Source: Botryllus schlosseri
Lineage: Eukaryota
Length of the DNA stretch: 64,000 bases
Direction of reading: 5' to 3'
NCBI GenBank assembly: GCA_051294905.1
Contig: CM119371.1
Location: 22,010,001-22,074,000, forward strand
The translations under genes were made by a program, and so were the position numbers. The notes under the pieces are model-generated. The model did no database searches. It worked only from the letters and a program-made list of their open reading frames with translations, and had not been told where the DNA came from. Every line of letters begins with the position of its first letter. Within the stretch, counting starts at the first letter, position 1. Shown piece after piece: positions 16,341 to 58,523 of the stretch.

Positions 16341-18019
16341 AACGGTTCAGTTTGATAAAATACAAAATCCAATCAATACAGGAATAACAATCATATGATA
16401 GCTTAATAGGCTACCAGTTTGGTTGGATTTGCTAGGCATCGTAATGATGAATAAGCAGACAATTCGGACAGTTACCAATTTAGAACAGTTGTTCCAGATA
16501 GATTATTGATTCTCAAACTGGGATCCGTGGTCCGTTTCAAAAATTCAAATGATCGAGGAAATTTTTTAAAAAGCAATTTTTTAAAAGTGTGTCGAGCGAT
16601 TCAAGATTCCAATACGTGCAAAATTGGGTACACAGTTTATGATATTGGATATGATATCAACGTCCGCTATCGTTTTTACCATTATGCAAACTCCTTATGG
16701 AATTAGACAGATTAGATTTGTCTGATCTAAACTCCTGAACAGTGACGTGCTGTCAAATGAGGCAGGTGAGGTATTGCCTTACCTGTCGTCAGGGTGAGCA
16801 AGAGAAAATTGTGAAAACCCTCAATGATAATTGATATTTTTCATCGATATTCATAAATAACTAAATTGTGAACATTGTTTTCACCCAACATCATCAATTT
16901 GCATAATTATTATTCAAAAATACATCGCGAAAGGAGAGGCGAGGCACGGGCGGGTCGTGACTCACCTGCGACAATGCAATTCATCATAAACAGCTCGGGA
17001 TTCATAATAATTGGTCTCAGTCAAATGCTGTCGTCGTACTGATTCCGAAAACCCAAATATTAACAGTCTCATAGCATCAGAACCCCTCAAAATGATCAAG
17101 GAATGTGAAATTCGGCTTTATTACAGACGATGCCATACAGCACTTGGACAATCTAAGCACAGTGAAGCGCGCTATCGATTTCGAGAAAACAACAGTCTTG
17201 TAGGACTTGTTTAGTAGCGACGGCCAATACGTAATGTGGAGAAAATACATTTCCAACTGATGTATAGCTGATATGTTCTGGCAAAATTGCGAGAGTATGG
17301 AAAAAATTTTCATCTCATATTTGGAAATTTCCATACTATACCATACATGTAGTTTCCCCTATTCCATACTGAAATTTCGTTCCATACCATATCAAACCAT
17401 GACCTAGCTTTATTGAATCTGATTTGTGCAGTGCGAGCCAAATATCACAGGTGCTAATCATACGATGTAATTTGAATGTTACAGCAACAGGAAAAATACT
17501 AACATTCTCATCTAGAAACAGATAAGTGAGAAAAAACGACGTATACCAAGAATTTCCGTGGCAGCTATAATGGACGTATGCAAGAGGCTTAGTGACACGA
17601 AGATACCAGCCCACCAGCATTTCTACAATCTTAGCCCAGTAATCATACAGCCGGAAAGCTTATCCATAGATATATGCGCTGTGTACTTGTTAAGATTTGA
17701 TCCTAATATTAAATCATATTGATATGGTGGCAGTTTTGTTCTTATGACAGTGTCATGTTCAAGATAATCATCACCAAACGGAACCGACTCGTTTTTCGCT
17801 ATTTTTCTGCTCATTCCCAAGTAGTATAAAATTGATGTATCAGCAGGAACAATCAACATTTAAATGCAATACCGTTTTGCAGCATGGCAACACAAAGGTT
17901 TCGAAACATTCCATATGTCTGAATGAAATATTTGTCAATCTGACAATTCATTAAATGTAAGGTGTTAACGATGCAAAAATTTCAAGATATGTGATGTATC
18001 CTGTGTTCAATAAAATGTG

Positions 18020-18918
18020 CTTTCAGCTAGAATGGCACTCCAGATATATCCCACAATTTATTGTCACCTCTGGCATGATATTCACACATCTCCTTAAAAT
18101 ACTGGTGAGTAAGTAAACGCTTTCCACGAGTCCAACACTCATATTTTCTGACACCGGTTATGTGCATTTTCATATGGCTTCTAGTGACCAAGCCGGATAA
18201 ACGCTTTCCTGTAGACCTGACAGTCATAGTTTCTGATTCCAGTATGTATGTTGCCATGTGTTTTCAAGTGATCAAGCCGGCTGAACGCTTTTCCGCATAT
18301 CTGACATGCATAGCATTTGACTCCGGCATGTGCAATTTCATGTCTTTTCACGTGACCGTGCCGTGTAAATGCTTTTCTGCACGTCTGAAATTCATAGTTT
18401 TTTACTCCTGTATGTGTATACTAATGTATTTTCAAGTTATTGAGTTGACTAAAACCTCTTCCACATATCTCACATTCATAGTTCTTGACTCCGGTATGTG
18501 TATGTCCATGTCTTTTGAAGTCAACAAGATGGGTAATCGCTTTTCCGCAAATCTGAAATGCATACTTTTTGACGCCAGTATGTGCATTTCCATGTGTTTT
18601 CAGGTGGCCGAGCCTCACAAACAAATTTCCACAGATATGACAATCGTGGTTTTTGACTCCAAGGGGAGAAGTATGTGTATATGCATGTATTTTCGAGTGA
18701 CAATTCAGATTGTCCTCTTTGCCAATGGTCATACATTCATTATTTTTCAAACCAGTGTGAGATAGCGTATGTTTTTTCAGTGTAGCGATTGCAGCAAAGG
18801 CTTTTCAGCAGATCTCACATTCAGTATTTCCATCTATAAGGTGGAATCGCAAGTGGGTTTTCAAACCGTCATGACGATGGAAGCTCATTCCACAGAGCCA
18901 GCACATCTTCTTCGTCAT
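18020..18918 (-). pseudogene. C2H2 ZF pseudogene (subfamily A)
   Basis: Starts MTKKMCWLCGMSFHRHDGLKTHLRFH; premature TGA at 18807-18805 in finger 2, further stops and shifts downstream; acceptor at 19059-19058. Confidence 0.9.
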
Positions 18919-20289: not shown

Positions 20290-22250
20290 AGGGATCCCCT
20301 TCAGGTTGGCTTTGTAAGGATGCTGCATACTGCATACTGGCAGAACACCATATCAGACCATAAGGAGCTGCCAGTTGTAGCGCTAAGATACTCTAGCAAT
20401 CTGAACGAAACAGAATGTTAAGGAGTGAAAATGTCAATAAGTTGTGTGAAATGGATGGCAGAAACAAGCACATATTTACAAGATAGTTACTACACTGAAA
20501 CTTATAATGAAATCGAACCTAAAGTACACCGACTGCTAATTATGAGAGAATATGGGAATGGATATGTAGCCTACTTGCAGATTGAAATGTTTGTGCAACG
20601 AACATAAGCATTAGCTCATCACACTGTGATACAAAAATTTTAACATCCACATCAAACTGCTTTGTTCTGGTCTGCTCTGTTTTATTGAAGCAGATTGGTG
20701 CAGTGCAAACCAGATTTTTCAGTTAGTAAGCATACACTTTCATTTAAATGTGAAGGAGAGGCACTCATATTCACGTAGTGAAACAAGTGAGTATGTAGTG
20801 GTAAAAAGACCAAAGACACGTAACCATTAGTTCAATATCATCCCAGAAATTAGGCGTCCCAAAATGGTGCTCCATAGATATATGTGCTACATGATAGTAC
20901 ATATTTCATTGCAATATTAAATCAAATTTATGTGCAGGCAGAGTGAATGGACGATGCCACTGAGTAACGGCATATTTTACTATTGGCTATCCAATGTTAC
21001 TGTATAACGGTATATTAAAAATTATCATCACGGATATCATCTATTCCTTGCTCCTTCATTTCAAAGTTGTTTTAAATTTGTGTGTCAACAGTAACATCCA
21101 GCAGCTAAATGCGGAAACGGTTCTTCAGCTCGAACACACAAACGATTCGAAGCATTTAGTATGAAAGTATGAAACATTTATCTGACAATTTATCAAATAC
21201 AAAATGTTAACGATGGTTGCTGATTCAAAAAGTCTAGTACATTGGATGCATCTTGTGTTCACGAAAACTCGGTTCTCGCTGTAATGACTTTTCATAGATA
21301 TCACAGAAACACCGTACTTGCTACCTCTAGCATGAATATACAGTGGACACGATCCATACATGTTCTAAAATTAACACTGGTGAATAGTAAGTAAGCGCAT
21401 TTCAGCAGATCTGACATGCATAGTTTTTGAGCCCAATATGTATATTTTCATGTATTTCCAAGTTACCAAGCAGGGTAATAGCTTTTTCGTGGACCTGACA
21501 CTCATAGTCTTTGCCTCCAGTATGTGTATTTCCATAGGTTTTGAAGTCACTAAGCTGGATAAACACTTTTCCGCAGATTTGATATTCATTAGTTTGTGAA
21601 TCCGGTATGTGCATTATCATGTGCTTTCAAGTCATTGAGCAGGGTAAACGGCTTTCTGCAGATCTGCCATGCATAGTTTTCGACAACAGTATGTGCATTT
21701 CCATGTATTTCCAAGTTACCAAGCCATGTAAACGCTTTTCTGTAGATCTGAAATGCATTAGTTTCTGATTCCGGTTTAAGTTACTGAGCCACGTAAACGG
21801 TTTTCCGCAGATCTGCCATGCGCAGTTTTTGACTCCGATGTGCGCATTTCCATGTATTTTCAAGTGAAAAAGCCGTTTATACGGTTTTCCGCCGACCTGA
21901 CACTCATTGTTTTTGACTCCAATATGTTTATTTCGATATGTTTTCAGATCAACAAGCCGGTTAAACGCTTTTCCGCAGCTTTATCCTGCAAATGCTTCGA
22001 ATCCAGTATGTGTATGTCCGTGTAATTTCAAGTGATCAAGCTGGCTAAACGTTTTCCTGCTGATCTGCAACGCATAGCTATCGACTCCAGTAAGAGTATT
22101 TCCATTTCCTATCAAGTTGGCAAGTCTGGTAAACGCTTTTCCATAGACCTGACACTCAGTTTTTGACTCGAGCATGTGTATTTTCATGTGTTTTCAGGTG
22201 ATGAAGCATGCTAAACGCTTTTCCGCAGATCTGACATGCATAGTTTTTTA
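20290..22250. repeat. segmental duplication unit, paralogous to 31175-33100
   Basis: Collinear alignable sequence (gggatcccc...aaggatgctgcatactg through the degenerate finger tail) with scattered substitutions and indels. Confidence 0.9.
21260..22247 (-). pseudogene. degenerate finger tail downstream of the 22248-23445 array
   Basis: About ten 84-bp finger units with stops and frameshifts (short ORFs 21371-21589, 21402-21620, 21627-21863, 21981-22187). Confidence 0.85.
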
Positions 22251-23445
22251 CTCCATATGTGTATTGCCATGTCTTCTCAAGTTCGAAAGGTGGCTAAATG
22301 TTTTTCCGCAGATCTGACATGCATAGTTTTTTACTCTAGTATGTGTATAAACATGTGTTATTAAGCACGAATGCTGGCCAAATTTTTTTCCGCAGATCTG
22401 ACATGCATATTGTTTGACTCCAGTATGTGTATGGCAATGTGTTTTCAAGTCATGAAGCTGGCTAAACGCTTTTCCGCAGATCTGACATGCATAGTTTTTG
22501 ACTCCAGTATGTGTATTTTCATGTCTTTTCAAGTCGTGAAGCTGGCTGAATGCTTTCGCGCAGATCTGACATTCATAGTTTTTGACTCTTGTGTGTGTAT
22601 TTTCATGTTTTTTCAAATCAGAACGCCGGGTAAATGCTTTTCCGCAGATGTGACATTCATAGTTTGTGACTCCGGTATGTGTAATCCCATGTGTTTTCAA
22701 GTTACCGATCTGACTAAATGCTTTTCCGCATATCTCACACTCATAGTTTTTGACTCCAGTATGTGTATTTTCATGTCTTTTCAAGCCGTGAAGCATGCTA
22801 AACGCTTTTCCGCAGATCTGACATGCATAGTTTTTGACTCCAGTATGTGTATTGCCATGTCTTCTCAAGTTCGAATGCTGGCTAAATGTTTTTCCGCAGA
22901 TCTGACATGCATAGTTTTTTACCCCAGTATGTGTATTAATATGTGTTTTTAAGCACCAATGCCGGCCAAATTTTTTTCCGCAGATCTGACATGCATATTG
23001 TTTGACTCCGGTATGTGTATGGCAATGTGTTTTCAAGTCATGAAGCTGGCTCAACGCTTTTCCGCAGATCCGACATGCATAGTTTTTGACTCCAGTATGT
23101 GTATTTTCATGTCTTTTCAAGTCGTGAAGCCGGCTAAATGCTTTTGCGCAGATCTGACATTCATAGTTTTTGACTCCTGTGTGTGTATTCTCATGTTTTT
23201 TCAAATCATAACGCCGGGTAAATGCTTTTCCGCAGATGAGACATTCATAGATTGTGACTCCGGTATGTGTAATCCCATGTGATTTCAAGTTACCGATCTG
23301 ACTAAATGCTTTTCGGCATATCTCACACTCATGGTTTTTGACTCCAGCATGTGTATTTCCATGTTCTTTCAAGCTGCTATGCTGAGTAATTGCTTTTCCA
23401 CATAATTCACATTCATACTTTTTGATTCCAGTATGTATATCTCCA
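22248..23445 (-). pseudogene. 5'-truncated C2H2 ZF gene, 14 intact fingers in open frame, native start removed by the Penelope-like insertion
   Basis: Open frame 22248-23456; the first codons derive from the antisense PLE; 588-bp (7-finger) internal duplication. Confidence 0.85.
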
Positions 23446-23467
23446 TCACCCATCACTGAAATTCACC

Positions 23468-24349
23468 ATGGAAAAAGAGGTTAATAATTCATTAGCATTC
23501 CTTGATGTTGTAGTGGAAAAGACGGGTGCTAATTTTGTTACATCAGTTTACCGTAAGCCTACATTCAGTGGGCAATACATTTCGTGGGATTCTTTCTGTC
23601 CAGTAAAACGTAAAGTAAATTTGATAAGAACTCTGGTACACAGGGCTCTGATGATTTGTAGTAAAGTCAAACTTGATTCTGAATTGGAGAACATTCGGTC
23701 AATCTTTCAGTCAAATGGTTATCCCGATCATATCATTAAAATGACCATAGATCGTAAACTCAAAGATTTCAGAAAAGTTAAACCGTTTGGACCTAGAAAA
23801 TGTCCTGTTTATTTGCATCTTCCTTGGATTGGGAAAGTGTCCAACAGGTTTGAAAAACAAATTAAATCGTCAGTGAGCCATTGTTTTTCACAAGTAGAAC
23901 CTCAGATAATCTTCATGACGAAATCTCTGATGCCTGCAACGCAAAAGGATGTGCTACCTGCGACAAATCAAAGCAACATAATATATGAATACACGTGCCG
24001 ATGTGAGAGTCGGTATGTAGGTCGCACGTCTCAGCGCTTGCAGCAAAGAATTCGCCAGCATGTCCCACGGCAAATTAGAATAAATAATGTTTCTCCAACT
24101 CCTTCATCGCAGTCTGTTGACACACTGCGTGATTATGATCAAGTTACTGCTTGTAATTCGGCTATTGGACAGCATCTCTTATCCCATCCAGAATGTGCTG
24201 ATCATTACAATGACAGTCAATTTTCTATACTCGCTCGTGGCCGTTCTCTTTTTCATTTAAAGGTCCTGGAATCTACGATCATAAAGCTACGAAAGCCGAT
24301 TCTCTGTCGCCAGAAGGAACGCCTCTACACTCTTGGAATATTTCATTAA
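23468..24349 (+). CDS. 5'-truncated PLE ORF (RT thumb + GIY-YIG endonuclease)
   Basis: Identical to the C-terminal 293 aa of the full ORFs. Confidence 0.85.
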   Translation: MEKEVNNSLAFLDVVVEKTGANFVTSVYRKPTFSGQYISWDSFCPVKRKVNLIRTLVHRALMICSKVKLDSELENIRSIFQSNGYPDHIIKMTIDRKLKDFRKVKPFGPRKCPVYLHLPWIGKVSNRFEKQIKSSVSHCFSQVEPQIIFMTKSLMPATQKDVLPATNQSNIIYEYTCRCESRYVGRTSQRLQQRIRQHVPRQIRINNVSPTPSSQSVDTLRDYDQVTACNSAIGQHLLSHPECADHYNDSQFSILARGRSLFHLKVLESTIIKLRKPILCRQKERLYTLGIFH

Positions 24350-24522
24350 TGTTATGTGTTGTGTTTTCGGTTATTTGTAACCGAATATGTACTCGTTAAC
24401 GTTTGTTTTGTACCGTTACTACCGTATCTAGCCCGTCTACTAGTTGTTTGTTTTTGTTATTATTACGTCATACAGACAAAATAGTTCTTACATTTCGAAT
24501 TTGATTCACCCCATCACTAACG

Positions 24523-24562
24523 TTCGCTACTGATGAGAGTTAGTCGAAAAGCTTTTAGCGAA
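24523..24562 (+). ncRNA. minimal type I hammerhead ribozyme, copy 1
   Basis: TTCGCTA-CTGATGA-GA gttag TC-GAAA-AGCTT-T-TAGCGAA: 7-bp stem I, CUGAUGA and GAAA cores, 2-bp stem II, palindromic stem III (AAGCTT); predicted cleavage after 24555. Confidence 0.9.
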
Positions 24563-24574
24563 TAAATTAACAAT

Positions 24575-27127
24575 ATGAAGTTATTGTTTCGCGTTATTCT
24601 GAAGTTCTGTACCACAAATCACTTGTTCAAATACTTTCGCAAAAGGTACAGTGACCAACAATTGGAGATCCTTAATAAGTTGGTCAGAACTCGGGGGAAA
24701 ATTCGAAATCTACGGTATCATGTAGCCTTTCTTAAGGCTTGTATAAAGAAAAGAGTTGTACCAAAGTTTCTGAAGACGAGGATAGAGAAATCGCGTGCTC
24801 GCATCAACTCCAGGATTGAGAGTGCATTTTTACATGATGAGATCGAGAACAGCGTAAAAGAGATGAGTACCGTAACTCAACGTTGTGCCAAGCTTAAGCA
24901 GCAGGCAGTGCAGTTTTTATCTTATTTTGACCTGATACGGTTTTGTCGTTATATGGCCAAAATTGATGCACGTAAAGAGGATGAGAAGGTACGGCAGAAT
25001 GAGCGTAACATCAACTTGCTTCTCAAGACACGATACGGTACCAAGGCAGTTGCTGGTAGTAAGGTTATTACCAACTTATCGGACTATGAGCTGAGTGACA
25101 CAGAAGAGTTGGTACTATCCCTTGGTCTTGATTTTTCTGTGCCACCGACAGAAATCAAGCGTGAGGAAGTCTTTGCTGAATTTGAGGTATTACTTGGACA
25201 ATTGTCACATCATCACCAGAAATTTGATGATGAAAGCAGAGCTAAGGAACACAGTGAGAAAATTGTGGCCCTTAAAGCCAAACTAAGTAGCTTAGCGCAT
25301 GGTTTTTGTGGAACTCCAATCGACAGAAGTGATTTCACGATGACGTCCGATTGTTACAGGAGCATCAGATCCCTGAAATCCAATAAGTCAATTCACATAA
25401 CCAAACCTGATAAAGGATCTGGTGTAGTCATTTTGAATAAGTGTGACTACATTTCTAAAATGGATTCAATTCTCGGCGACAAGTCTAAATTTGAAATCCT
25501 TGGCCCTGCGTGTGACAATGACAACACCTCCAAGATAGAAGCTCGTATTCAGCGTCTACTATTGACCCTCAAGAAGGCGGGAAAAATCTCTTCTGCTGAA
25601 TACGACGACATCAGACCCACTGGCTCTATTCGACCACGTATGTATGGTCTTCCGAAGACCCATAAATCGAATGTACCCTTACGTCCGATACTATCGATGG
25701 TTGGATCAGCGTATCACAAAGTCGCGAAGTGGATTGCAAGATATCTTGAGCCGGTGAGTTTGTTCTATGGTGGTAACTGCATTCGTGACTCGTTCACATT
25801 TGCTGATACCATTCGTAATGTTGATCTCGATGAGTCCGAAATCTCTATGTGTTCGTTTGATATATCTAGTTTATTCACGAACGTGCCAGTTCAAGAGACT
25901 ATAGAGATTTGTGCCAATGAGCTCTATGGTGGTGTCCTTCCATCTCCTCCATTCTCAAGGTCTTCTTTTGTTAAATTAATGCGATTGATCACTTGTGATG
26001 TCGAATTTAGTTTCAATAACACCATATATACACAGATCGATGGTGTTGCAATGGGATCGCCGCTTGGTCCCATTCTGGCTAACATTTTTGTGGGGTATTA
26101 CGAAAAACGGTTATTCGAAGATATTGATCGACCATTAATGTATCAAAGATATGTTGATGACACCTTCGCCATATTTGAAAATGAATCCCAGTGTGATTTG
26201 TTTCTGAGCAAATTGAATGGTCTTCACCCATCACTGAAATTCACCATGGAAAAAGAGGTTAATAATTCATTAGCATTCCTTGATGTTGTAGTGGAAAAGA
26301 CGGGTGCTAATTTTGTTACATCAGTTTACCGTAAGCCTACATTCAGTGGGCAATACATTTCGTGGGATTCTTTCTGTCCAGTAAAACGTAAAGTAAATTT
26401 GATAAGAACTCTGGTACACAGGGCTCTGATGATTTGTAGTAAAGTCAAACTTGATTCTGAATTGGAGAACATTCGGTCAATCTTTCAGTCAAATGGTTAT
26501 CCCGATCATATCATTAAAATGACCATAGATCGTAAACTCAAAGATTTCAGAAAAGTTAAACCGTTTGGACCTAGAAAATGTCCTGTTTATTTGCATCTTC
26601 CTTGGATTGGGAAAGTGTCCAACAGGTTTGAAAAACAAATTAAATCGTCAGTGAGCCATTGTTTTTCACAAGTAGAACCTCAGATAATCTTCATGACGAA
26701 ATCTCTGATGCCTGCAACGCAAAAGGATGTGCTACCTGCGACAAATCAAAGCAACATAATATATGAATACACGTGCCGATGTGAGAGTCGGTATGTAGGT
26801 CGCACGTCTCAGCGCTTGCAGCAAAGAATTCGCCAGCATGTCCCACGGCAAATTAGAATAAATAATGTTTCTCCAACTCCTTCATCGCAGTCTGTTGACA
26901 CACTGCGTGATTATGATCAAGTTACTGCTTGTAATTCGGCTATTGGACAGCATCTCTTATCCCATCCAGAATGTGCTGATCATTACAATGACAGTCAATT
27001 TTCTATACTCGCTCGTGGCCGTTCTCTTTTTCATTTAAAGGTCCTGGAATCTACGATCATAAAGCTACGAAAGCCGATTCTCTGTCGCCAGAAGGAACGC
27101 CTCTACACTCTTGGAATATTTCATTAA
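24575..27127 (+). CDS. PLE reverse transcriptase / GIY-YIG endonuclease, 850 aa
   Basis: KPDKG, YGLPKTHK..PLRPI, SFDISSLFTNVP, GVAMGSPLGP, YVDD, AFLDV, VYRKPT RT motifs; IIYEYTCRCESRYVGRT..L..RI.QH GIY-YIG motif. Confidence 0.95.
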   Translation: MKLLFRVILKFCTTNHLFKYFRKRYSDQQLEILNKLVRTRGKIRNLRYHVAFLKACIKKRVVPKFLKTRIEKSRARINSRIESAFLHDEIENSVKEMSTVTQRCAKLKQQAVQFLSYFDLIRFCRYMAKIDARKEDEKVRQNERNINLLLKTRYGTKAVAGSKVITNLSDYELSDTEELVLSLGLDFSVPPTEIKREEVFAEFEVLLGQLSHHHQKFDDESRAKEHSEKIVALKAKLSSLAHGFCGTPIDRSDFTMTSDCYRSIRSLKSNKSIHITKPDKGSGVVILNKCDYISKMDSILGDKSKFEILGPACDNDNTSKIEARIQRLLLTLKKAGKISSAEYDDIRPTGSIRPRMYGLPKTHKSNVPLRPILSMVGSAYHKVAKWIARYLEPVSLFYGGNCIRDSFTFADTIRNVDLDESEISMCSFDISSLFTNVPVQETIEICANELYGGVLPSPPFSRSSFVKLMRLITCDVEFSFNNTIYTQIDGVAMGSPLGPILANIFVGYYEKRLFEDIDRPLMYQRYVDDTFAIFENESQCDLFLSKLNGLHPSLKFTMEKEVNNSLAFLDVVVEKTGANFVTSVYRKPTFSGQYISWDSFCPVKRKVNLIRTLVHRALMICSKVKLDSELENIRSIFQSNGYPDHIIKMTIDRKLKDFRKVKPFGPRKCPVYLHLPWIGKVSNRFEKQIKSSVSHCFSQVEPQIIFMTKSLMPATQKDVLPATNQSNIIYEYTCRCESRYVGRTSQRLQQRIRQHVPRQIRINNVSPTPSSQSVDTLRDYDQVTACNSAIGQHLLSHPECADHYNDSQFSILARGRSLFHLKVLESTIIKLRKPILCRQKERLYTLGIFH

Positions 27128-27300
27128 TGTTATGTGTTGTGTTTTCGGTTATTTGTAACCGAATATGTACTCGTTAACGTTTGTTTTGTACCGTTACTAC
27201 CGTATCTAGCCCGTCTACTAGTTGTTTGTTTTTGTTATTATTACGTCATACAGACAAAATAGTTCTTACATTTCGAATTTGATTCACCCCATCACTAACG

Positions 27301-27340
27301 TTCGCTACTGATGAGAGTTAGTCGAAAAGCTTTTAGCGAA
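27301..27340 (+). ncRNA. minimal type I hammerhead ribozyme, copy 2
   Basis: Identical to 24523-24562, +2778. Confidence 0.9.
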
Positions 27341-27352
27341 TAAATTAACAAT

Positions 27353-29905
27353 ATGAAGTTATTGTTTCGCGTTATTCTGAAGTTCTGTACCACAAATCAC
27401 TTGTTCAAATACTTTCGCAAAAGGTACAGTGACCAACAATTGGAGATCCTTAATAAGTTGGTCAGAACTCGGGGGAAAATTCGAAATCTACGGTATCATG
27501 TAGCCTTTCTTAAGGCTTGTATAAAGAAAAGAGTTGTACCAAAGTTTCTGAAGACGAGGATAGAGAAATCGCGTGCTCGCATCAACTCCAGGATTGAGAG
27601 TGCATTTTTACATGATGAGATCGAGAACAGCGTAAAAGAGATGAGTACCGTAACTCAACGTTGTGCCAAGCTTAAGCAGCAGGCAGTGCAGTTTTTATCT
27701 TATTTTGACCTGATACGGTTTTGTCGTTATATGGCCAAAATTGATGCACGTAAAGAGGATGAGAAGGTACGGCAGAATGAGCGTAACATCAACTTGCTTC
27801 TCAAGACACGATACGGTACCAAGGCAGTTGCTGGTAGTAAGGTTATTACCAACTTATCGGACTATGAGCTGAGTGACACAGAAGAGTTGGTACTATCCCT
27901 TGGTCTTGATTTTTCTGTGCCACCGACAGAAATCAAGCGTGAGGAAGTCTTTGCTGAATTTGAGGTATTACTTGGACAATTGTCACATCATCACCAGAAA
28001 TTTGATGATGAAAGCAGAGCTAAGGAACACAGTGAGAAAATTGTGGCCCTTAAAGCCAAACTAAGTAGCTTAGCGCATGGTTTTTGTGGAACTCCAATCG
28101 ACAGAAGTGATTTCACGATGACGTCCGATTGTTACAGGAGCATCAGATCCCTGAAATCCAATAAGTCAATTCACATAACCAAACCTGATAAAGGATCTGG
28201 TGTAGTCATTTTGAATAAGTGTGACTACATTTCTAAAATGGATTCAATTCTCGGCGACAAGTCTAAATTTGAAATCCTTGGCCCTGCGTGTGACAATGAC
28301 AACACCTCCAAGATAGAAGCTCGTATTCAGCGTCTACTATTGACCCTCAAGAAGGCGGGAAAAATCTCTTCTGCTGAATACGACGACATCAGACCCACTG
28401 GCTCTATTCGACCACGTATGTATGGTCTTCCGAAGACCCATAAATCGAATGTACCCTTACGTCCGATACTATCGATGGTTGGATCAGCGTATCACAAAGT
28501 CGCGAAGTGGATTGCAAGATATCTTGAGCCGGTGAGTTTGTTCTATGGTGGTAACTGCATTCGTGACTCGTTCACATTTGCTGATACCATTCGTAATGTT
28601 GATCTCGATGAGTCCGAAATCTCTATGTGTTCGTTTGATATATCTAGTTTATTCACGAACGTGCCAGTTCAAGAGACTATAGAGATTTGTGCCAATGAGC
28701 TCTATGGTGGTGTCCTTCCATCTCCTCCATTCTCAAGGTCTTCTTTTGTTAAATTAATGCGATTGATCACTTGTGATGTCGAATTTAGTTTCAATAACAC
28801 CATATATACACAGATCGATGGTGTTGCAATGGGATCGCCGCTTGGTCCCATTCTGGCTAACATTTTTGTGGGGTATTACGAAAAACGGTTATTCGAAGAT
28901 ATTGATCGACCATTAATGTATCAAAGATATGTTGATGACACCTTCGCCATATTTGAAAATGAATCCCAGTGTGATTTGTTTCTGAGCAAATTGAATGGTC
29001 TTCACCCATCACTGAAATTCACCATGGAAAAAGAGGTTAATAATTCATTAGCATTCCTTGATGTTGTAGTGGAAAAGACGGGTGCTAATTTTGTTACATC
29101 AGTTTACCGTAAGCCTACATTCAGTGGGCAATACATTTCGTGGGATTCTTTCTGTCCAGTAAAACGTAAAGTAAATTTGATAAGAACTCTGGTACACAGG
29201 GCTCTGATGATTTGTAGTAAAGTCAAACTTGATTCTGAATTGGAGAACATTCGGTCAATCTTTCAGTCAAATGGTTATCCCGATCATATCATTAAAATGA
29301 CCATAGATCGTAAACTCAAAGATTTCAGAAAAGTTAAACCGTTTGGACCTAGAAAATGTCCTGTTTATTTGCATCTTCCTTGGATTGGGAAAGTGTCCAA
29401 CAGGTTTGAAAAACAAATTAAATCGTCAGTGAGCCATTGTTTTTCACAAGTAGAACCTCAGATAATCTTCATGACGAAATCTCTGATGCCTGCAACGCAA
29501 AAGGATGTGCTACCTGCGACAAATCAAAGCAACATAATATATGAATACACGTGCCGATGTGAGAGTCGGTATGTAGGTCGCACGTCTCAGCGCTTGCAGC
29601 AAAGAATTCGCCAGCATGTCCCACGGCAAATTAGAATAAATAATGTTTCTCCAACTCCTTCATCGCAGTCTGTTGACACACTGCGTGATTATGATCAAGT
29701 TACTGCTTGTAATTCGGCTATTGGACAGCATCTCTTATCCCATCCAGAATGTGCTGATCATTACAATGACAGTCAATTTTCTATACTCGCTCGTGGCCGT
29801 TCTCTTTTTCATTTAAAGGTCCTGGAATCTACGATCATAAAGCTACGAAAGCCGATTCTCTGTCGCCAGAAGGAACGCCTCTACACTCTTGGAATATTTC
29901 ATTAA
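27353..29905 (+). CDS. PLE reverse transcriptase / GIY-YIG endonuclease, 850 aa, second identical copy
   Basis: Translation identical to 24575-27127. Confidence 0.95.
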   Translation: MKLLFRVILKFCTTNHLFKYFRKRYSDQQLEILNKLVRTRGKIRNLRYHVAFLKACIKKRVVPKFLKTRIEKSRARINSRIESAFLHDEIENSVKEMSTVTQRCAKLKQQAVQFLSYFDLIRFCRYMAKIDARKEDEKVRQNERNINLLLKTRYGTKAVAGSKVITNLSDYELSDTEELVLSLGLDFSVPPTEIKREEVFAEFEVLLGQLSHHHQKFDDESRAKEHSEKIVALKAKLSSLAHGFCGTPIDRSDFTMTSDCYRSIRSLKSNKSIHITKPDKGSGVVILNKCDYISKMDSILGDKSKFEILGPACDNDNTSKIEARIQRLLLTLKKAGKISSAEYDDIRPTGSIRPRMYGLPKTHKSNVPLRPILSMVGSAYHKVAKWIARYLEPVSLFYGGNCIRDSFTFADTIRNVDLDESEISMCSFDISSLFTNVPVQETIEICANELYGGVLPSPPFSRSSFVKLMRLITCDVEFSFNNTIYTQIDGVAMGSPLGPILANIFVGYYEKRLFEDIDRPLMYQRYVDDTFAIFENESQCDLFLSKLNGLHPSLKFTMEKEVNNSLAFLDVVVEKTGANFVTSVYRKPTFSGQYISWDSFCPVKRKVNLIRTLVHRALMICSKVKLDSELENIRSIFQSNGYPDHIIKMTIDRKLKDFRKVKPFGPRKCPVYLHLPWIGKVSNRFEKQIKSSVSHCFSQVEPQIIFMTKSLMPATQKDVLPATNQSNIIYEYTCRCESRYVGRTSQRLQQRIRQHVPRQIRINNVSPTPSSQSVDTLRDYDQVTACNSAIGQHLLSHPECADHYNDSQFSILARGRSLFHLKVLESTIIKLRKPILCRQKERLYTLGIFH

Positions 29906-30078
29906 TGTTATGTGTTGTGTTTTCGGTTATTTGTAACCGAATATGTACTCGTTAACGTTTGTTTTGTACCGTTACTACCGTATCTAGCCCGTCTACTAGT
30001 TGTTTGTTTTTGTTATTATTACGTCATACAGACAAAATAGTTCTTACATTTCGAATTTGATTCACCCCATCACTAACG

Positions 30079-30118
30079 TTCGCTACTGATGAGAGTTAGT
30101 CGAAAAGCTTTTAGCGAA
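30079..30118 (+). ncRNA. minimal type I hammerhead ribozyme, copy 3
   Basis: Identical to 24523-24562, +5556; the array ends 39 nt after its predicted cleavage site (30111). Confidence 0.9.
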
Positions 30119-30389
30119 TAAATTAACAATATGAAGTTATTGTTTCGCGTAAAAAACAAAGTACACTGAAATTTTTTTGATATGTGGAAGAGGCTTAATG
30201 ACACGAAGACACAAGCACATCAATATTTCTACAATATGTCTCGGAATCAAGCAGCCTGTATGGTGATCCAAACATGTGTTCGCTATTTACTTATAAAGAT
30301 TTGATCACAGTACTTGATCATAGTGATATGGTGCCACAGTGAATGGAGGACTCCATCGAGGAACAGCATATTTTAATATAGGGTGTTTC

Positions 30390-30982
30390 CGTCTATGGTA
30401 CTGTATCATGAAAGTGCGCGACCTCTGCACTTATGAAATTGCCAAGACCATGTACCGATATCACCATGGTGAATTCCCTTCTGCTCTTAGCCGCATCTTT
30501 ACGCCATCTGCCGGTGTCCACTCTCACGGAACCAGATCCGCCACTGCTGGAAATATCTTTATACAGAATTTAGCCGCTAGTGTGTGCCAGAGATCCTTGA
30601 CTTTTGTTGGTCCAAGGATTTGGAACTCCTTATCAATAGAGCACAGAGGTTTGTCATTTGCATCATTCTGTCGGAATTTTAAGTCTCAACTCATTTCCAC
30701 ATATTGAGACCTGAGAGTATAATCTGGTATTTATTTTGAACTAGTGTTATAGTTTTTTTTGTTTCTACTACCACTGTTTTGCGATTGCGTTTTGTTGTTT
30801 ATTCTTTTGTTGAAATGTTACTGACCGACAGTTGCATGATATAAATGTTCTAACGTTACGCCTTGACTACAGCTGACTTGAAGACTACACATCTTGATGT
30901 GGTCATATCGCTGTGTTTGTCTTTTTTACATATTTGTGTGAACAACCATCGTACGAATAAAGAATCTGTCTGTCTGTCTGTC
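30390..30982 (+). mobile_element. L2/Crack/CR1-group LINE 3' fragment with (TCTG)n tail
   Basis: MKVRDLCTYEIAKTMYRY...HSHGTRS...SLTFVGPRIWNSL...FKSQLISTY* followed by a 3' UTR, AATAAA and (tctg)n at 30965-30982. Confidence 0.85.
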
Positions 30983-31174
30983 CCAGATCATTATCACAAG
31001 ACGAAATAGACTTGCGTTTTCATAGTCCTTTGCTCATTTTAGAGTTGTCCTAAATTTATGTATCAGCAGTAATGCAAACACTGTAATGCAAAAACTATTC
31101 TTTAGCTTGACAACAAAAACGATTGGAAGATTTCGAATATAAAAAGCTAACGATGCTATAAGACTAGAAAATTC

Positions 31175-33100
31175 CGGGATCCCCTTCTGGTTGTCTTTGT
31201 AAGGATGCTGCATACTGACAGAACACCATATCAGACCATAAGGAGCTGCCAGTGTTAGCGCTAAGATACTCTAGCAATCTGAACGAAACGGAATGTAATG
31301 AGGGAGTGAAAATGTCAATAAGTTGTGTGAAATGGATGGCAGAAACAAGCACATATTTACAAGATAGTTACTACACTGAAACTTATGAAATCGAACCTAA
31401 TGTACACAGACTGCTGATTACGAGATAATATGGGAATTGATATGTAGCCTACTTGCAGCTTGAAATGTTTGTGCAATGAACATAGCATTAGCTCATCATA
31501 CTGTGATACAAAAATTTTAACATCCACATCAAACTGCTTTGTTCTGGTCTGCTCTGTTTTATTGAAGCTAATTGGTGCAGTCCAAACCAGATCTTTCAGT
31601 TAGTAAGCATACGCTTTCATTTAAATGTGAAGGAGAGGCACTCATATTCTCGTAGTGAAACAAGTGAGTATGTAGTGGTATGAAGACCAAAGGCACGCAA
31701 CCATTTATTCAATGCCATCCCAGAAATTAGGCATCCAAAAATGGTGCTCCATAGATATATGTGCTACATACTAGTACATATTTCATTGCAATATTAAATC
31801 AAATTGATGTGCTGGCAGAGTGAATGGACGATTCCACTGAGTAACGGCATATTTTACTATTGGCTTTCCAATGTTACTGTATTACGGTATATTGAAAATT
31901 ATCATCACGGATATCATCTATTCCTTGCTCCTTCATTTCAAAGTTGTTATAAATTTGTGTGTCAACAGTAACATCCAGCAGCTAAATGCGGAAACGGTTC
32001 TTCAGCTCGAACACACAAACAATTCGAAGGATTTAGTACGAAAGTATGGAACATTTATCTGACAATTTATCAAATACATAATGTTAACGATGGTTGCTGA
32101 TTCAAAAAGTCTAGTACATTGGGTGCATTTTGTGTTCACGAAAACTCGGTTCTCGCTGCAATGAATTTTCATAGATATCACAGAAACACCGTACTTGCTA
32201 CCCCTAGCATGAATATATAGTGGATACGATCCATACAAAATCTAAAATTAACACTGGTTAATAGTAAGTAAACACATTTCAGCAGATCTGACATGCATAG
32301 TTTTTGAGCCCAAAATGTATATTTTCATGTATTTCCAAGTTACCAAGCAGGGTGATAGCTTTTTCGTGGACCTGACACTCATAGTCTTTGACTCCAGTAT
32401 GTGTATTTCCATAGATTTTGAAGTCACTAAGCTGGATAAATACTTTTCCGCAGATTTGATATTAATTAGTTTGTGATTCCGGTATGCGCATTCTCATGTG
32501 CTTTCAAGTTATTGAGCAGGGTAAACGGCTTTCTGCAGATCTGCCATGCATAGTTTTCGACAACAGTATGTGCATTTCCATGTCTTTTCAAGTTACCAAG
32601 CCATGTAACCGCTTTTCTGTAGATCAGTAATTCATTAGTCTCTGATTCCGGTTCAAGTTATTGAACCACGTAAACGGTTTTCCGCAGATCTGCCATGCGT
32701 TGTTTTTGACTCCGATGTGCGCATTTCCATGTATTTTCAAGTGAAAAAACCGTTTATACCGTTTTCCGCGACCTGACACTCATTGTTTTTGACTCCAATA
32801 TGTTTATTTCGATGTGTTTTCAGATGAACAAGCCGGTTAAACGCTTTTCCGCAGCTTTAACCCGCAAATGCTTGGAATCCAGTAGGTGTATGTCCGTGTA
32901 ATTTCAAGTGATCAAGCTGGCTAAACGCTTTTCTGCGGATCTGCAACGCATGGCTATCAACTCCAGTAAGAGTATTTCCATTTCTTTTCAAGTTGGCAAG
33001 TCTGGTAAACGCTTTTCCATAGACCTGACCCTCAGTTTTTGACTCAAGCATGTGTATTTCCATGTGTTTTCAAGTCATGAAGCTGGCTAAACGCTTTTCT
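31175..33100. repeat. segmental duplication unit, paralogous to 20290-22250 (includes degenerate finger tail ~32140-33043)
   Basis: Collinear alignment including shared frame-breaking lesions. Confidence 0.9.
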
Positions 33101-34438
33101 GCAGATCTGACATGCATAGTTTTTGACTCCAGTATGTGTATTTTCATGTCTTTTCAAGTCGTGAAGCCGGCTAAATGCTTTTGCGCAGATCTGACATTCA
33201 TAATTTTTGACTCCAGTATGTGTATGACCATGTCTTTTCAAGTTATCGAGACGATTGAATGCTTTACCACAGATCTGACACTCGTAGTTTTTGACTCCAG
33301 TATGTGTATTTCCATGTCTGTTCAAGTCACCAAGATGAGTGAATAGTTTACCACAGATCTGACACGTATAGTCTTTAAATCCGGTATGTGCGTGACCATG
33401 TGTTTTCAAGGTGCCAAGCTGACTGAATGATTTTCCACAGATCTGACACTCGTGTTTTTTGACTCCTATATGTACATGATCATGTGTTTTCAAGGAACTT
33501 AAATGACTAAATGATTTTCCACAGATCTCACACTTATAGTCTTTGACTCCGGCATGTGCATTCTTGTGTGTTTTCAAGTTACTTGGATGATTGAACGCTT
33601 TCCCGCAAATCTGACATTCATAGTTTTTGACTCCAGTATGTGTATTTCCATGTCTGTTCAAGTCACCAAGCTGGGTGAACGATTTACCACAGATCTCACA
33701 TTTGTAGTCTTTGACTCCGGCATGTGCATTCTTGTGTGTTTTCAAGTTACTTGGATGATTGAACGCTTTCCCGCAAATCTGACATTCATAGTTTTTGACT
33801 CCAGTATGTGTATTTCCATGTCTGTTCAAGTCACCAAGCTGGGTGAACGATTTACCACAGATCTGACACTCATAGTCTTTGACTCCGGTATGTGCATTCT
33901 CGTGTCTTTTCAAGTTACCTGAATGAATAAACGCTTTCCCGCAAATCTGGCATTCATAGTTTTTGACTCTTGTATGTGTATTTAGATGTATTCTCAAGTC
34001 AGCGACAAGAGTAAACGTCATTCCACAGATCTCACACTCATGGTTTCTGAGTCCAGTATGTATCCTTCCTCGTGTTTTCGAGTCATTGAATCGCACAAAC
34101 GACCTTCCAAAGATCTGGTGCTCATGGTCTCTGATTCCGGCGTGAGTTATAATGTGTTTTGCTGAAAATGTCTTCCCAGCAAAAGACTTCCCACACATCT
34201 CACGTTCATAATTTTTTTCTTCAGTGCGTGTGTCTCTATGTCTATTCAAGTTGTCGCTCAGATATTTCAAACCAGTGTGCGATAATACATGTTTTTTCAG
34301 TGCATAGATTGCAGCAAAGGATTTTCCGCAGATCTCACATTCGGTATTCCTATCTTCAAGGTGAAATCGCAGGTGAGTTTTCAATCCATCATGACGATAG
34401 AAGCTCTTTCCACGTATCGAGCACATCTTCTTAGTCAT
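33044..34438 (-). CDS. tandem C2H2 zinc-finger protein, subfamily A, 464 aa (13 canonical plus several degenerate N-terminal fingers)
   Basis: Open frame; ATG preceded by in-frame TAA 4 codons upstream; acceptor (ttacag) at 34574-34573; near-exact 168-bp two-finger duplication at about 33554-33889. Confidence 0.9.
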   Translation of the reverse strand: MTKKMCSIRGKSFYRHDGLKTHLRFHLEDRNTECEICGKSFAAIYALKKHVLSHTGLKYLSDNLNRHRDTRTEEKNYEREMCGKSFAGKTFSAKHIITHAGIRDHEHQIFGRSFVRFNDSKTRGRIHTGLRNHECEICGMTFTLVADLRIHLNTHTRVKNYECQICGKAFIHSGNLKRHENAHTGVKDYECQICGKSFTQLGDLNRHGNTHTGVKNYECQICGKAFNHPSNLKTHKNAHAGVKDYKCEICGKSFTQLGDLNRHGNTHTGVKNYECQICGKAFNHPSNLKTHKNAHAGVKDYKCEICGKSFSHLSSLKTHDHVHIGVKKHECQICGKSFSQLGTLKTHGHAHTGFKDYTCQICGKLFTHLGDLNRHGNTHTGVKNYECQICGKAFNRLDNLKRHGHTHTGVKNYECQICAKAFSRLHDLKRHENTHTGVKNYACQICRKAFSQLHDLKTHGNTHA

Positions 34439-57869: not shown

Positions 57870-58523
57870 GAGACCTGGTCTATTAAATGTACCCTTGCAA
57901 TTAAACGTTTTACCGCAGATCTTGCATGCAAAGTCTTTCACAGTTTGACTGCAGTGTGATTAATCATTATATGATGCTAACTTTGCCATTCTGACAACGG
58001 ACTTCCCACAGATCTCTCAAGCGTATTTTTTTTTGGCTCCAATGGTCTTTCAGTAGGCCGAGAGGAGTAAACGCTTTGCCACAGTTCACACGGTCATGAT
58101 TTTTGAAACCACTGTGTGTTATTAGATGAGTTTTCAATGAAGAGTTCGCAGTGAAAGCTACACTATATACCTCACATTTACAGTTTTCAACTCTGTATTC
58201 GTACTCGTACTTGTGTATTCGTATTACTTTTAATTGGCTAATCTGTGTAAACACTTTGCAACAGATCCCACACTCAGTTTTTGAGTCCGGTGTTTACTAG
58301 AATATGATGCTCTATGTTTGTCTTTGAAGCGAAAGACATTCCACATATTCCACATTCATGGTTCTTGAAACCGGTGTGGATCATGAGATGTACCTTTGTA
58401 GCGAAGGACTTAACACACATCTCAGATTCACAGTTTTTCACTCCAGTGTATATTCTCATGTTGTTTCAAGTCACTCTTCGCAGTGAACACTTTCTCACAG
58501 ATCAAACATTCATAATTTCTTAC
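57870..58523 (-). pseudogene. degenerate finger tail of the 58524-59696 gene
   Basis: Frameshifted finger module sharing lesions with 39850-40540. Confidence 0.85.

What the first reader, a model, noticed from the sequence alone, without database searches (positions are those of the whole stretch)
23446..30150. Perfect 2.41-unit Penelope concatemer consistent with rolling reverse transcription of a ribozyme-generated circular RNA
Seen: identical 2778-bp units joined head-to-tail with no spacer, 5'-truncated mid-RT and ending 39 nt past the third predicted ribozyme cut. Each unit is 2553 nt of ORF plus a 225-nt spacer containing one hammerhead. Established: PLEs form partial tandems with pseudo-LTRs and short 3' tails and encode minimal hammerheads; hammerhead retrozymes produce circular RNAs. 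Inference: cleavage at successive ribozymes releases an exact 2778-nt monomer that can circularise, and TPRT primed just 3' of the junction and running around about 2.4 times gives exactly this structure. That would be an autonomous protein-coding circRNA retrotransposon with intact, probably active copies. Alternatives are repeated template jumps, post-insertion unequal crossover or assembly over-expansion.
Basis: partly seen in the sequence, partly recalled or inferred. Interest (0 to 1): 0.85.

Follow-up and report, generated by a model that had tools for sequence, protein, structure and literature searches.

The report
Perfect 2.4-unit Penelope retrotransposon concatemer
This is a very recent insertion of a Penelope-like retrotransposon laid down as 2.4 identical head-to-tail copies; this is typical for the family, and the data fit copying from a circular RNA (an idea published in 2014) without showing it.

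Summary
Window 23446-30150 is a 6,705-bp array of period 2,778 with zero mismatches (2.41 units). Each unit holds an 850-aa RT + GIY-YIG ORF and a 225-nt spacer with a minimal type-I hammerhead core. The array ends 39 nt past the third predicted cut.

It is a very young canonical Penelope-like element (PLE) and is not exceptional in its genome. There are about 580 arms and 18 loci with at least one unit. Arms of 2.0-4.4 units occur in at least 4 lineages. Twin inverted arms, 9-12-bp target duplications and tails ending in two zones (~40 and ~70) match published PLE biochemistry.

New constraints:
- Units, and both arms, of one insertion are near-identical (1.8e-4/nt), while insertions differ by about 1%.
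- Junctions are always intact.
- Almost no arm starts at the ribozyme cut.

The concatemer was therefore most likely born in one internally primed reverse-transcription event, on a continuous template carrying one unit's information. A circular RNA fits, but so does unprocessed multimeric or re-used linear RNA. Nothing here shows cleavage or a circle. Hammerhead-less PLEs make the same tandems, and the circle idea was published in 2014. This is an ordinary member of a known kind and a good test system.

The parts
23446..24555 (+). 5'-truncated first unit (unit positions 1669-2778): C-terminal third of the ORF (to 24349) plus the first spacer/pLTR
   Evidence: 100% identical to the matching part of the two full units; its 5' end is joined inside a zinc-finger repeat
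24556..27333 (+). full unit 1, counted from predicted hammerhead cut to cut (2,778 nt)
27334..30111 (+). full unit 2, identical to unit 1
30112..30150 (+). 39-nt 'tail' (unit positions 1-39, including the first 20 nt of a third ORF copy); its end marks where reverse transcription started
   Evidence: Twenty-two tails at 15 loci end at ~37-49 or ~68-76. PMC11167929 shows that tails mark internal RT start sites
24575..27127 (+). 850-aa ORF: N-terminal helical region, reverse transcriptase, C-terminal GIY-YIG endonuclease
   Evidence: RVT_1, E=7e-10, residues 367-548. GIY-YIG, E=0.0022 (below cut-off), at the IIYEYTC...YVGRT motif seen; nearest Atlas clusters have HTH_animal+DUF8422+RVT_1+GIY-YIG
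27353..29905 (+). second, identical 850-aa ORF
24523..24562 (+). minimal type-I hammerhead motif, predicted cut 24555/24556 (copy 1 of 3)
   Evidence: read; fold energies; no Rfam match
27301..27340 (+). hammerhead motif, copy 2, predicted cut 27333/27334
   Evidence: identical by periodicity
30079..30118 (+). hammerhead motif, copy 3, predicted cut 30111/30112
   Evidence: identical by periodicity
24350..24574 (+). 225-nt spacer (pseudo-LTR core) between ORF copies; repeated at 27128-27352 and 29906-30130
21391..23445 (-). left target flank: C2H2 zinc-finger array (84-bp period) of a minus-strand gene, cut off from its 5' part by the insertion
30151..31175 (.). right target flank: sequence with no full counterpart elsewhere in the window; it does not continue the zinc-finger exon and there is no target-site duplication

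Best explanation
This is one retrotransposition event of a young, canonical (C-terminal endonuclease) Penelope-like element.

Inferred, by analogy with the Anolis element: the element's protein nicked the target.

Shown by the tail: reverse transcription started at an internal start zone of the RNA, 39 nt past the pLTR-ORF junction.

Shown by the sequence: the enzyme copied backwards for 6.7 kb across three intact junctions.

Shown at family level: the template carried only one unit's worth of sequence information.

Shown: the cDNA's 5' end, at unit position 1669, was then joined inside a zinc-finger exon without a target duplication.

The concatemer was therefore born multi-unit at the RT step. 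It is not the product of later DNA events, nor of nested insertions.

What made the template effectively endless is not resolved. The options are a closed unit-length circle, a long unprocessed multimeric transcript, or homology-guided re-use of a terminally redundant linear RNA. My odds are about 0.25, 0.30 and 0.12 respectively.
For: Periodicity is perfect over 6,705 bp.

The same architecture recurs at 15 sequenced loci:
- a 5'-truncated start;
- in-register units;
- a tail ending at ~37-49 or ~68-76;
- often an inverted partner arm with its own tail, joined by 3-6 nt of microhomology;
- 9-12-bp target duplications.
This matches the in vitro behaviour of a PLE protein: two internal RT start sites, with both strands cleaved and extended (PMC11167929).

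The units carry one unit's worth of information. Of the variant sites covered more than once in a locus, 175 are present in all copies, and 41 of these are private to one locus. About 10 internal sites are heterogeneous. Within loci there are 19 differences in 103,090 compared positions, against a between-locus median of 27 per unit. Multi-unit arrays lie in at least 4 lineages that differ by 9-34 sites.

Unit starts per arm are 1:11, 2:8, 3:2, 4:1, with no obvious cap. The longest arm is 12,180 nt, or 4.38 units.

The 3.03-unit and 2.01-unit arms have only 84 and about 63 nt of terminal redundancy. That is a poor substrate for unequal crossover, so they were probably born multi-unit.

Junctions are intact in essentially all arms: 373 of 390 exact sites have a pyrimidine at the -12 position (T in the unit), and nearly all of the 100 listed show the complete upstream junction.
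Against: - No spanning DNA reads were examined for this locus.
- Perfect identity would also follow from very recent unequal sister-chromatid exchange starting from a 1.41-unit insertion.
- Survival through the second unit (11/16) is much higher than through the first (22/112; p=1.3e-4). That fits a processive subclass of RT complexes, but it also fits DNA-level growth once a tandem exists.
- This locus has no target duplication and no inverted partner, so its 5' junction is atypical.
- Three multi-unit loci (C11:0.89M, C11:23.98M, C13:6.13M) could not be fetched.
Confidence: 0.7

Rival explanations
1. Hammerheads at successive junctions cut out an exact 2,778-nt monomer. A host RNA ligase closes it. 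Target-primed RT starts 39 nt past the ligated junction and runs about 2.4 times round the circle.
For: A circle explains several facts at once:
- one unit's information per insertion;
- always-intact, in-register junctions with no class of arms ending at the cut;
- unit numbers up to 4.38 with a roughly constant chance of ~0.3-0.5 of adding another unit;
- the need for some mechanism that regenerates more-than-unit copies in each lineage.

Hammerhead retrozymes, whose sequences resemble PLE pLTRs, do form abundant circles (PMC7229834; bioRxiv 10.64898/2026.07.22.740005). The hypothesis itself is published (PMC4209133). Two Logan assemblies give a closed 2,808-nt (2,778+30) cycle at depth 26 and 70, although tandem DNA or RNA would give the same result.
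Against: - There is no direct sign of cleavage or of a circle.
- The hammerhead is of the weak, dimer-dependent minimal type. Helix II has 2 bp, and the monomer fold is -0.5 against -10.9 kcal/mol.
- In Anolis PAc, hammerhead-dead RNAs insert equally well, and no RNA-seq reads end at the cut (PMC11167929).
- Naiad and most Chlamys PLEs lack hammerheads yet form the same pLTRs and multicopy head-to-tail insertions (PMC8557442).
- In two raw RNA runs the reads pile up only on pLTR-plus-tail fragments embedded in other transcripts. Unit positions 55-900 have about zero depth, and no molecule ends pile up at 27333/27334.
- Three long arms end at 2729-2756, the zone where half of all arms stop. A template with a real 5' end would give that. 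On a circle it needs a special pause site.
Confidence: 0.25
2. The template was a long, unprocessed linear transcript of a multi-unit donor array. RT initiated at an internal start site of a downstream unit and copied back through upstream units. This is the published PAc scenario.
For: [quoted passage not shown] Eleven arms in this genome have at least 2 unit starts and could give such transcripts. Arms of 1.04, 2.01 and 3.03 units that begin at 2729-2756 look like run-off at a fixed RNA 5' end after whole numbers of units. A template-switch-oligo-tagged 5' end lies in the pLTR at unit 2601 in single-cell reads.
Against: On its own this model can only keep or lose units. It cannot explain how at least 4 diverged lineages each hold internally homogeneous arrays, and it needs an extra growth step. 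Stops in the 2720-2767 zone occur in ~52% of first passes but in only 3 of 24 later passes (p=7e-5). Most later junctions were therefore continuous, and donors would have to be at least as long as their progeny.
Confidence: 0.3
3. Homology-guided re-use of a terminally redundant, roughly 1.x-unit linear RNA. On reaching the RNA's 5' end in the pLTR, the cDNA end re-pairs with the identical pLTR copy near the 3' end and copies the unit again. This would be a kilobase-scale analogue of telomerase repeat addition or of retroviral strand transfer.
For: It would give in-register junctions, one unit's information and unlimited units. It works without a ribozyme, so it would also serve hammerhead-less PLEs (PMC8557442). 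PLE RTs are the sister group of telomerase RTs (PMC8557442). The 5' ends of three long arms fall in one pLTR zone.
Against: If every later junction passage were a transfer at an RNA end, the stop rate there should match the first-pass stop rate. It is 3/24 against ~52%. No such activity has been reported for a PLE RT.
Confidence: 0.12
4. Post-insertion unequal crossover. An ordinary 1.41-unit insertion gained one unit by unequal sister-chromatid or homologue exchange within its 1,149-nt repeated part.
For: It gives identical units in the same register, with the same 5' end and tail. Kilobase tandem duplications are recombination-prone (general knowledge). Survival through a second unit is higher than through the first, as expected if tandems grow after insertion.
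Against: Arms of 3.03 and 2.01 units started with only 84 and about 63 nt of repeat. In four twin-arm loci both arms reach at least one unit, and 6 of those 8 arms have at least 2 units; independent DNA expansions should rarely coincide like this. The unit-number distribution fits a single RT run-length model (and the arithmetic in the report).
Confidence: 0.12
5. Assembly over-expansion of a 1.41-unit insertion.
For: Perfect 2.8-kb repeats are hard to assemble. PLE structures are known to trouble short-read assemblies (PMC8557442).
Against: The genome is 495 Mb in 219 contigs. Eleven arms of 2-4.4 units at 9 loci, each with locus-specific variants and clean flanks, cannot all be artefacts.
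Confidence: 0.03
6. Repeated end-to-end template jumps between ribozyme-cleaved linear monomers (positions 1-2778).
For: It would give one unit's information and unit-length periodicity.
Against: Failed jumps would leave arms starting exactly at position 1. At most 17 of 390 exact sites could be such arms, and nearly all listed ones carry the intact upstream junction. All 37 internal junctions are in register.
Confidence: 0.03

Closest known systems
Canonical EN+ Penelope-like elements (Penelope/Poseidon type; biochemically, PAc of Anolis carolinensis, PMC11167929)
   Same: [quoted passage not shown]
- Pseudo-LTRs from partial tandems, and inverted 5'-truncated partner arms.
- A hammerhead at the pLTR-ORF junction.
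- Tails that end at two start zones about 30 nt apart.
   Different: - Start zones lie 18-25 and 49-57 nt into the ORF (111-118 in PAc).
- The hammerhead cut lies 19 nt before the ATG (26 nt after it in PAc).
- The family is extremely young, with copies differing by 1% or less.
- Arms of up to 4.4 perfect units are resolved in the assembly.
Circular-RNA hypothesis for PLE tandems (Cervera & de la Pena 2014, PMC4209133)
   Different: It remains untested. Here it is only constrained by family-level data: one unit's information per insertion, intact junctions, and no run-off at the cut.
Hammerhead retrozymes (plant LTR type, PMC4918200; animal non-LTR type, PMC7229834)
   Same: Tandem units each carry one hammerhead. 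Unit-length RNA circles are proposed as templates for tandem cDNA. Animal retrozymes are related to PLE pLTRs (bioRxiv 10.64898/2026.07.22.740005).
   Different: Retrozymes are 170-1000 nt, non-coding and non-autonomous, and their circles have been demonstrated. This unit is 2.8 kb, encodes its own RT and endonuclease, and no circle has been shown.
L1 twin priming
   Same: Both DNA ends of a staggered break prime cDNA. This gives inverted arms joined by microhomology and flanked by a target duplication.
   Different: Here each arm begins at an internal RNA site and carries a tail. In 7 of 7 twin loci, one arm used the ~40 zone and the other the ~70 zone.

Membership tests
Penelope-like element (canonical, C-terminal EN) | single ORF with a reverse-transcriptase domain | tested here: met
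   RVT_1, E=7e-10, above cut-off; weak palm-domain matches, including telomerase RT; nearest Atlas clusters are animal RVT_1 proteins with the same length and architecture.
Penelope-like element (canonical, C-terminal EN) | C-terminal GIY-YIG endonuclease with a Cys motif | tested here: met
   GIY-YIG, E=0.0022, 18.7 bits (below the 22.6 cut-off), at the expected place. The motif IIYEYTCRCESRYVGRTSQRLQQRIRQH was read. Atlas clusters carry PF01541.
Penelope-like element (canonical, C-terminal EN) | partial tandems forming pLTRs, inverted 5'-truncated partners, 30-40-bp tail at one end | tested here: met
   In 7 of 7 twin-arm loci one arm has a tail about 30 nt longer than the other.
Penelope-like element (canonical, C-terminal EN) | RT branches with PLEs, next to telomerase RT, in a phylogeny | not tested
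   No tree was built. There are only weak TERT matches.
Minimal type-I hammerhead of PLEs (Cervera & de la Pena 2014 descriptor) | conserved core CUGANGA...GAAA, cleavage triplet UH, helix I, very short helix III with a palindromic loop | tested here: met
   CUGAUGA, GAAA, U16.1-U17|U, 7-bp helix I, A-U closing pair around AGCU. The 34-nt motif occurs 514 times, with 0 in the reversed control.
Minimal type-I hammerhead of PLEs (Cervera & de la Pena 2014 descriptor) | stable helix II / active fold | tested here: inconclusive
   Helix II has only 2 Watson-Crick pairs. The hammerhead fold is -0.5 kcal/mol against an MFE of -10.9. Two copies pair through the AAAAGCUUUU palindrome. There is no Rfam match. 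No covariation test was possible because all copies are near-identical.
Minimal type-I hammerhead of PLEs (Cervera & de la Pena 2014 descriptor) | self-cleavage | not testable with these tools
   Indirect evidence only: no cDNA run-off at the cut and no RNA read ends there.
Retrozyme-type circular-RNA retroelement | unit bounded by two hammerheads in the same orientation | tested here: met
   cuts at 24555/6, 27333/4 and 30111/2, 2,778 nt apart.
Retrozyme-type circular-RNA retroelement | unit-length linear and circular RNAs accumulate | tested here: inconclusive
   the raw RNA runs cover only pLTR-plus-tail fragments, with about zero depth on unit positions 55-900. The closed 2,808-nt Logan contigs come from runs whose RNA status is a guess, and tandem copies would also close into a cycle. 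No holder run is on record as RNA.
Retrozyme-type circular-RNA retroelement | non-coding, non-autonomous, mobilised in trans | tested here: not met
   The unit encodes an intact 850-aa RT-EN protein.

The most novel reading that the evidence does not exclude
An autonomous, protein-coding Penelope-like element propagates through a unit-length, ribozyme-made circular RNA. Rolling target-primed reverse transcription copies that circle, and this regenerates the more-than-unit copies the family needs in every generation. The family-level signature found here fits it: one unit's information per insertion, unbroken junctions, and unit numbers without a cap.
Probability: 0.25. Interest if true: 0.8.

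Novelty: new member of a known kind. Interest (0 to 1): 0.45.

Why it matters
How PLEs build their tandem and inverted copies is still described as undefined (PMC8557442). The one in vitro study does not explain how more-than-unit copies are regenerated.

This genome holds an unusually young family:
- between-copy divergence is 1% or less, and within-insertion divergence is 2e-4;
- about 580 arms are resolved, with intact ORFs and arrays of up to 4.4 units.

The competing templates (circle, multimer, re-used linear RNA) make different predictions that can be checked here with standard RNA and population data. The within- versus between-insertion variant test used here can be applied to any PLE family. 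The specific locus is otherwise ordinary. It also disrupts a zinc-finger gene.

Tried and rejected
- Rfam scan at E<=1 found no hammerhead, only chance lncRNA hits. The motif was checked by hand and by energy.
I used a 34-mer at unit positions 105-138 instead.
C11:0.89M, C11:23.98M and C13:6.13M are therefore known only from pattern coordinates, and the ~560 short arms could not be read individually.
- A global-alignment script timed out. BLAST pieces were used instead.
- Leading Ns in a pattern were trimmed. Replacing the first N with Y showed the upstream 12 nt.
- Exact-match lists proved unreliable for presence or absence, because single SNPs hide copies. Counts at up to 3 mismatches were used.
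- Read laying on RNA gave no unit-length signal, no ends at the cut and no way to tell a circle from a tandem. The 'goes back 2778' joint is an artefact of laying reads on a permuted unit.
- Neither run search found a holder on record as RNA.
- Earlier notes of the scan added nothing testable.
- Self-homing or nested insertion as the source of the tandem is rejected. It would give out-of-register or heterogeneous units, whereas the units are in register and share private variants.
- An intrinsic sequence or structure stop at 2720-2767 acting equally on every pass is rejected (3/24 against ~52%).
All comparisons are pairwise against the window's own unit.

Full report
**1. The observation**

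The window is perfectly periodic with period 2,778 from 23446 to 30150. There is no mismatch inside and an immediate breakdown outside. That is 6,705 bp, or 2.41 units.

Each unit holds a 2,553-nt ORF (850 aa; 24575-27127 and 27353-29905) and a 225-nt spacer. The array begins at unit position 1669, near the end of the RT domain. It ends 39 nt past the third junction, 20 nt into a third ORF copy.

The spacer carries a type-I hammerhead core: helix I UUCGCUA/UAGCGAA (7 bp), CUGAUGA, a 2-bp helix II, GAAA, an A-U pair closing a palindromic AGCU loop, and cleavage after UU at 24555, 27333 and 30111. Rfam does not recognise it. As a monomer the hammerhead fold is worth only -0.5 kcal/mol against -10.9 for the best alternative, and two copies pair through the AAAAGCUUUU palindrome. 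This is the weak, dimer-type 'minimal' hammerhead described for PLEs (PMC4209133).

**2. What it is**

The ORF has RVT_1 (E=7e-10). It has a sub-threshold GIY-YIG match exactly at an IIYEYTC...YVGRT...RQH motif near the C-terminus. It gives faint palm-domain matches to telomerase RT. Its nearest Atlas clusters are animal proteins of the same length with HTH_animal, DUF8422, RVT_1 and GIY-YIG. Together with the repeat structure described below, this is a canonical endonuclease-bearing Penelope-like element.

The insertion sits in a cluster of minus-strand C2H2 zinc-finger genes (84-bp arrays). Its 5' end is fused inside a finger repeat at 23445/23446. The right flank (30151-31175) neither continues that exon nor repeats the left flank. 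This locus therefore has no target duplication, and the zinc-finger gene has lost its 5' part.

**3. The family in the same genome**

The genome is 495 Mb in 219 contigs.

*Pattern counts.* Counts are at up to 3 mismatches, and reversed controls gave 0 in every case.

| Unit positions | Count |
|---|---|
| 1-34 | 620 |
| 35-68 | 245 |
| 105-138 | 37 |
| 2000-2033 | 138 |
| 2650-2683 | 296 |
| 2719-2752 | 292 |
| 2737-2770 | 334 |
| 2753 to +8 | 514 |

There are therefore about 580 terminal 'arms'. Only 37 unit starts exist, in 18 loci. Counted per arm, unit starts are 1 in 11 arms, 2 in 8, 3 in 2 and 4 in 1.

*Fifteen loci read in full*. Examples:
- C10:6.49M has a 12,180-nt arm of 4.38 units (period 2,781) plus an inverted arm of 1.66 units.
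- C6:30.41M has arms of 3.03 and 0.93 units.
- C13:13.06M has arms of 2.58 and 0.39 units.
- C3 has an arm of 2.30 units, and C7 one of 2.01 units.

From coordinates alone, C11:0.89M has arms of roughly 3.1-3.2 and 2.3-2.4 units, and C13:6.13M has two arms of about 2.9 units. The window's copy is therefore typical, not a record.

*Shared anatomy:*
- Every arm ends in a tail. After trimming alignment run-on, 22 tails end at 37-49 (11 tails) or 68-76 (11 tails). Genome-wide, about 36% are of the long class.
- Seven loci have two inverted arms meeting 5' end to 5' end, with 3-6 nt of microhomology or 1-30 nt of filler. In all seven, one tail is short and the other long.
- Target duplications of 9-12 bp flank such insertions, for example ACGTTGTAA and ACAATAGAAAAA.

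This is the published PLE anatomy (PMC8557442). It matches the in vitro behaviour of the Anolis element: RT starts at two adjacent internal RNA sites, and both DNA strands are cleaved and extended (PMC11167929).

**4. New constraints on the template**

(a) *One unit's information per insertion.* Relative to the window's unit, 175 variant sites that are covered more than once within a locus are present in every copy there, including both inverted arms. Forty-one of them are private to one locus. Only about 10 internal sites are heterogeneous. Within loci there are 19 differences in 103,090 compared positions (1.8e-4 per nt). Between loci the median is 27 per unit (9.9e-3 per nt). Multi-unit arrays occur in at least four lineages that differ by 9-34 sites. 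Arrays are thus regenerated from a single unit's sequence again and again. A chain of multimers copied from multimers would accumulate unit-specific variants. Nested insertions of different copies would be heterogeneous.

(b) *Junctions are intact.* Of 390 exact copies of positions 1-22, 373 have a pyrimidine at -12 (T in the unit). Nearly all of the 100 listed show the complete upstream TCGAAAAGCTTT. Arms that begin at the ribozyme cut are therefore at most 4%. Cleaved linear monomers were not run-off templates, which all but excludes end-to-end jumping between such monomers.

(c) *An early-stop zone.* About half of all arms end 11-60 nt upstream of the cut (620 falling to 292). There is then no further loss over the next 70 nt (292 against 296). 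Three long arms (1.04, 2.01 and 3.03 units) also begin at 2729-2756, against 0.2 expected (p=1e-3). The zone is therefore not a fixed block. Later junctions were mostly read straight through.

(d) *Run lengths.* I corrected the counts at 2650 and 2000 for upstream units, using my own arithmetic. Of the arms reaching position 2000 of the last unit, 22/112 go on to position 105. In the next unit, 11/16 do so (p=1.3e-4). A two-class model reproduces all counts: about 10% of complexes are processive with a hazard near 2e-4 per nt, and the rest have a hazard near 1.3e-3. It also reproduces the 11:8:2:1 unit distribution without any cap on template length.

(e) *Unequal crossover is an unlikely origin for two arms.* The 3.03- and 2.01-unit arms have only 84 and about 63 nt of terminal redundancy, so unequal crossover is an unlikely origin for them.

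**5. RNA evidence**

The element is held by 20 public runs of 11 studies, under five organism labels, but none is on record as RNA.

I laid a bulk and a single-cell RNA run (raw reads) on a permuted unit. Reads pile up only on unit ~2460-2778 plus 1-54, and 90% of the bulk reads run on into unrelated sequence. They are host transcripts carrying solo fragments. The 5' half of the unit (positions 55-900) has about zero depth and the rest of the ORF body 0-3x. No molecule ends accumulate at 27333/27334. Five template-switch-oligo-tagged reads mark a 5' end at unit 2601.

Two assemblies of uncertain library type each give one 2,808-nt contig. That is 2,778+30, a closed cycle. Tandem copies would give the same result as a circle.

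**6. Weighing the explanations**

Points (a) to (e) make it likely (0.7) that the window's concatemer was laid down in a single internally primed RT event, on a template that was continuous across junctions and carried one unit's information.

A ribozyme-made circle satisfies all of these points and supplies the growth mechanism the family needs. But:
- nothing here shows cleavage or circularity;
- the ribozyme is weak;
- the hammerhead is dispensable in vitro, and no reads end at its cut in Anolis (PMC11167929);
- hammerhead-less Naiad and Chlamys PLEs build the same pLTRs and multicopy head-to-tail insertions (PMC8557442), so some ribozyme-independent route must exist.

I put the circle at 0.25, unprocessed multimeric transcripts (with some added growth step) at 0.30, homology-guided re-use of a redundant linear RNA at 0.12, unequal crossover at 0.12, and assembly error and end-to-end jumps at 0.03 each.

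**7. Novelty**

The same authors proposed rolling copying of circles for retrozymes (PMC7229834). Multi-ORF tandems are part of the standard PLE description.

The locus is a new, very young member of a known kind. What is useful is the family: it is young and well assembled enough for the open question of PLE tandem formation to be tested, and the within/between-insertion variant comparison is a simple new handle on that question.

Noticed in passing
window 21391-23445 (-) and 30151-31175: The insertion cuts a minus-strand C2H2 zinc-finger gene off from its 5' part. There is no target-site duplication. The right flank does not continue the exon, and only 30185-30336 resembles 17579-17732 (75%). 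This suggests a target deletion or rearrangement at insertion.
   Followed up: partly
window 13482-14331, 18135-18661, 21391-23446, 32268-34061, ~58500-59700; 20291-20906 vs 31176-31783: There is a tandem cluster of zinc-finger genes with 84-bp finger arrays. A 91-94% segmental duplication spaced ~10.88 kb apart brackets the insertion.
   Followed up: no
G000 genome-wide: About half of the ~580 arms are 'mini-arms' of roughly 50-130 nt: 11-60 nt upstream of the cut plus a tail. Many lie as inverted pairs ~100-250 bp apart. This explains the solo and paired inverted minimal hammerheads scattered through the genome. The stop zone is sharp, with no further loss between unit positions 2719 and 2650.
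   Followed up: partly
L036+L037 (C6:30.41M), L033, L038, L041+L042, L031+L032, L044, C13:13.06M: In all 7 twin-arm insertions, one arm ends in the short-tail zone (37-49) and the other in the long-tail zone (68-76). Both arms share the locus's private variants, as if the two halves of one complex primed ~30 nt apart on the same RNA species.
   Followed up: partly
L041+L042 (G000:C10:6484400-6504300): The largest insertion read is a 12,180-nt arm of 4.38 units with period 2,781 (a 3-nt insertion present in every unit), plus an inverted arm of 1.66 units. By coordinates, C13:6.12-6.14M holds two inverted arms of about 2.9 units each (~16 kb).
   Followed up: partly
runs X1-X20: Runs labelled with five different organisms (A-E) hold at least 82% of the element's 31-mers. 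The family is near-identical across those labels. This means close relatives, mislabelling, or recent horizontal spread.
   Followed up: no
window 27156 (unit 2601) and 27155: Single-cell reads carry a template-switch oligo directly before 27156, a possible transcription start in the pLTR. Nearly all RNA reads have A where the window copy has G at 27155, so most expressed fragments come from other copies.
   Followed up: no
runs X7, X18: Each assembly contains one 2,808-nt contig (2,778 + k-1) that closes on itself, at depth 26 and 70. The whole unit including the junction is abundant there, but the library type is only guessed.
   Followed up: partly
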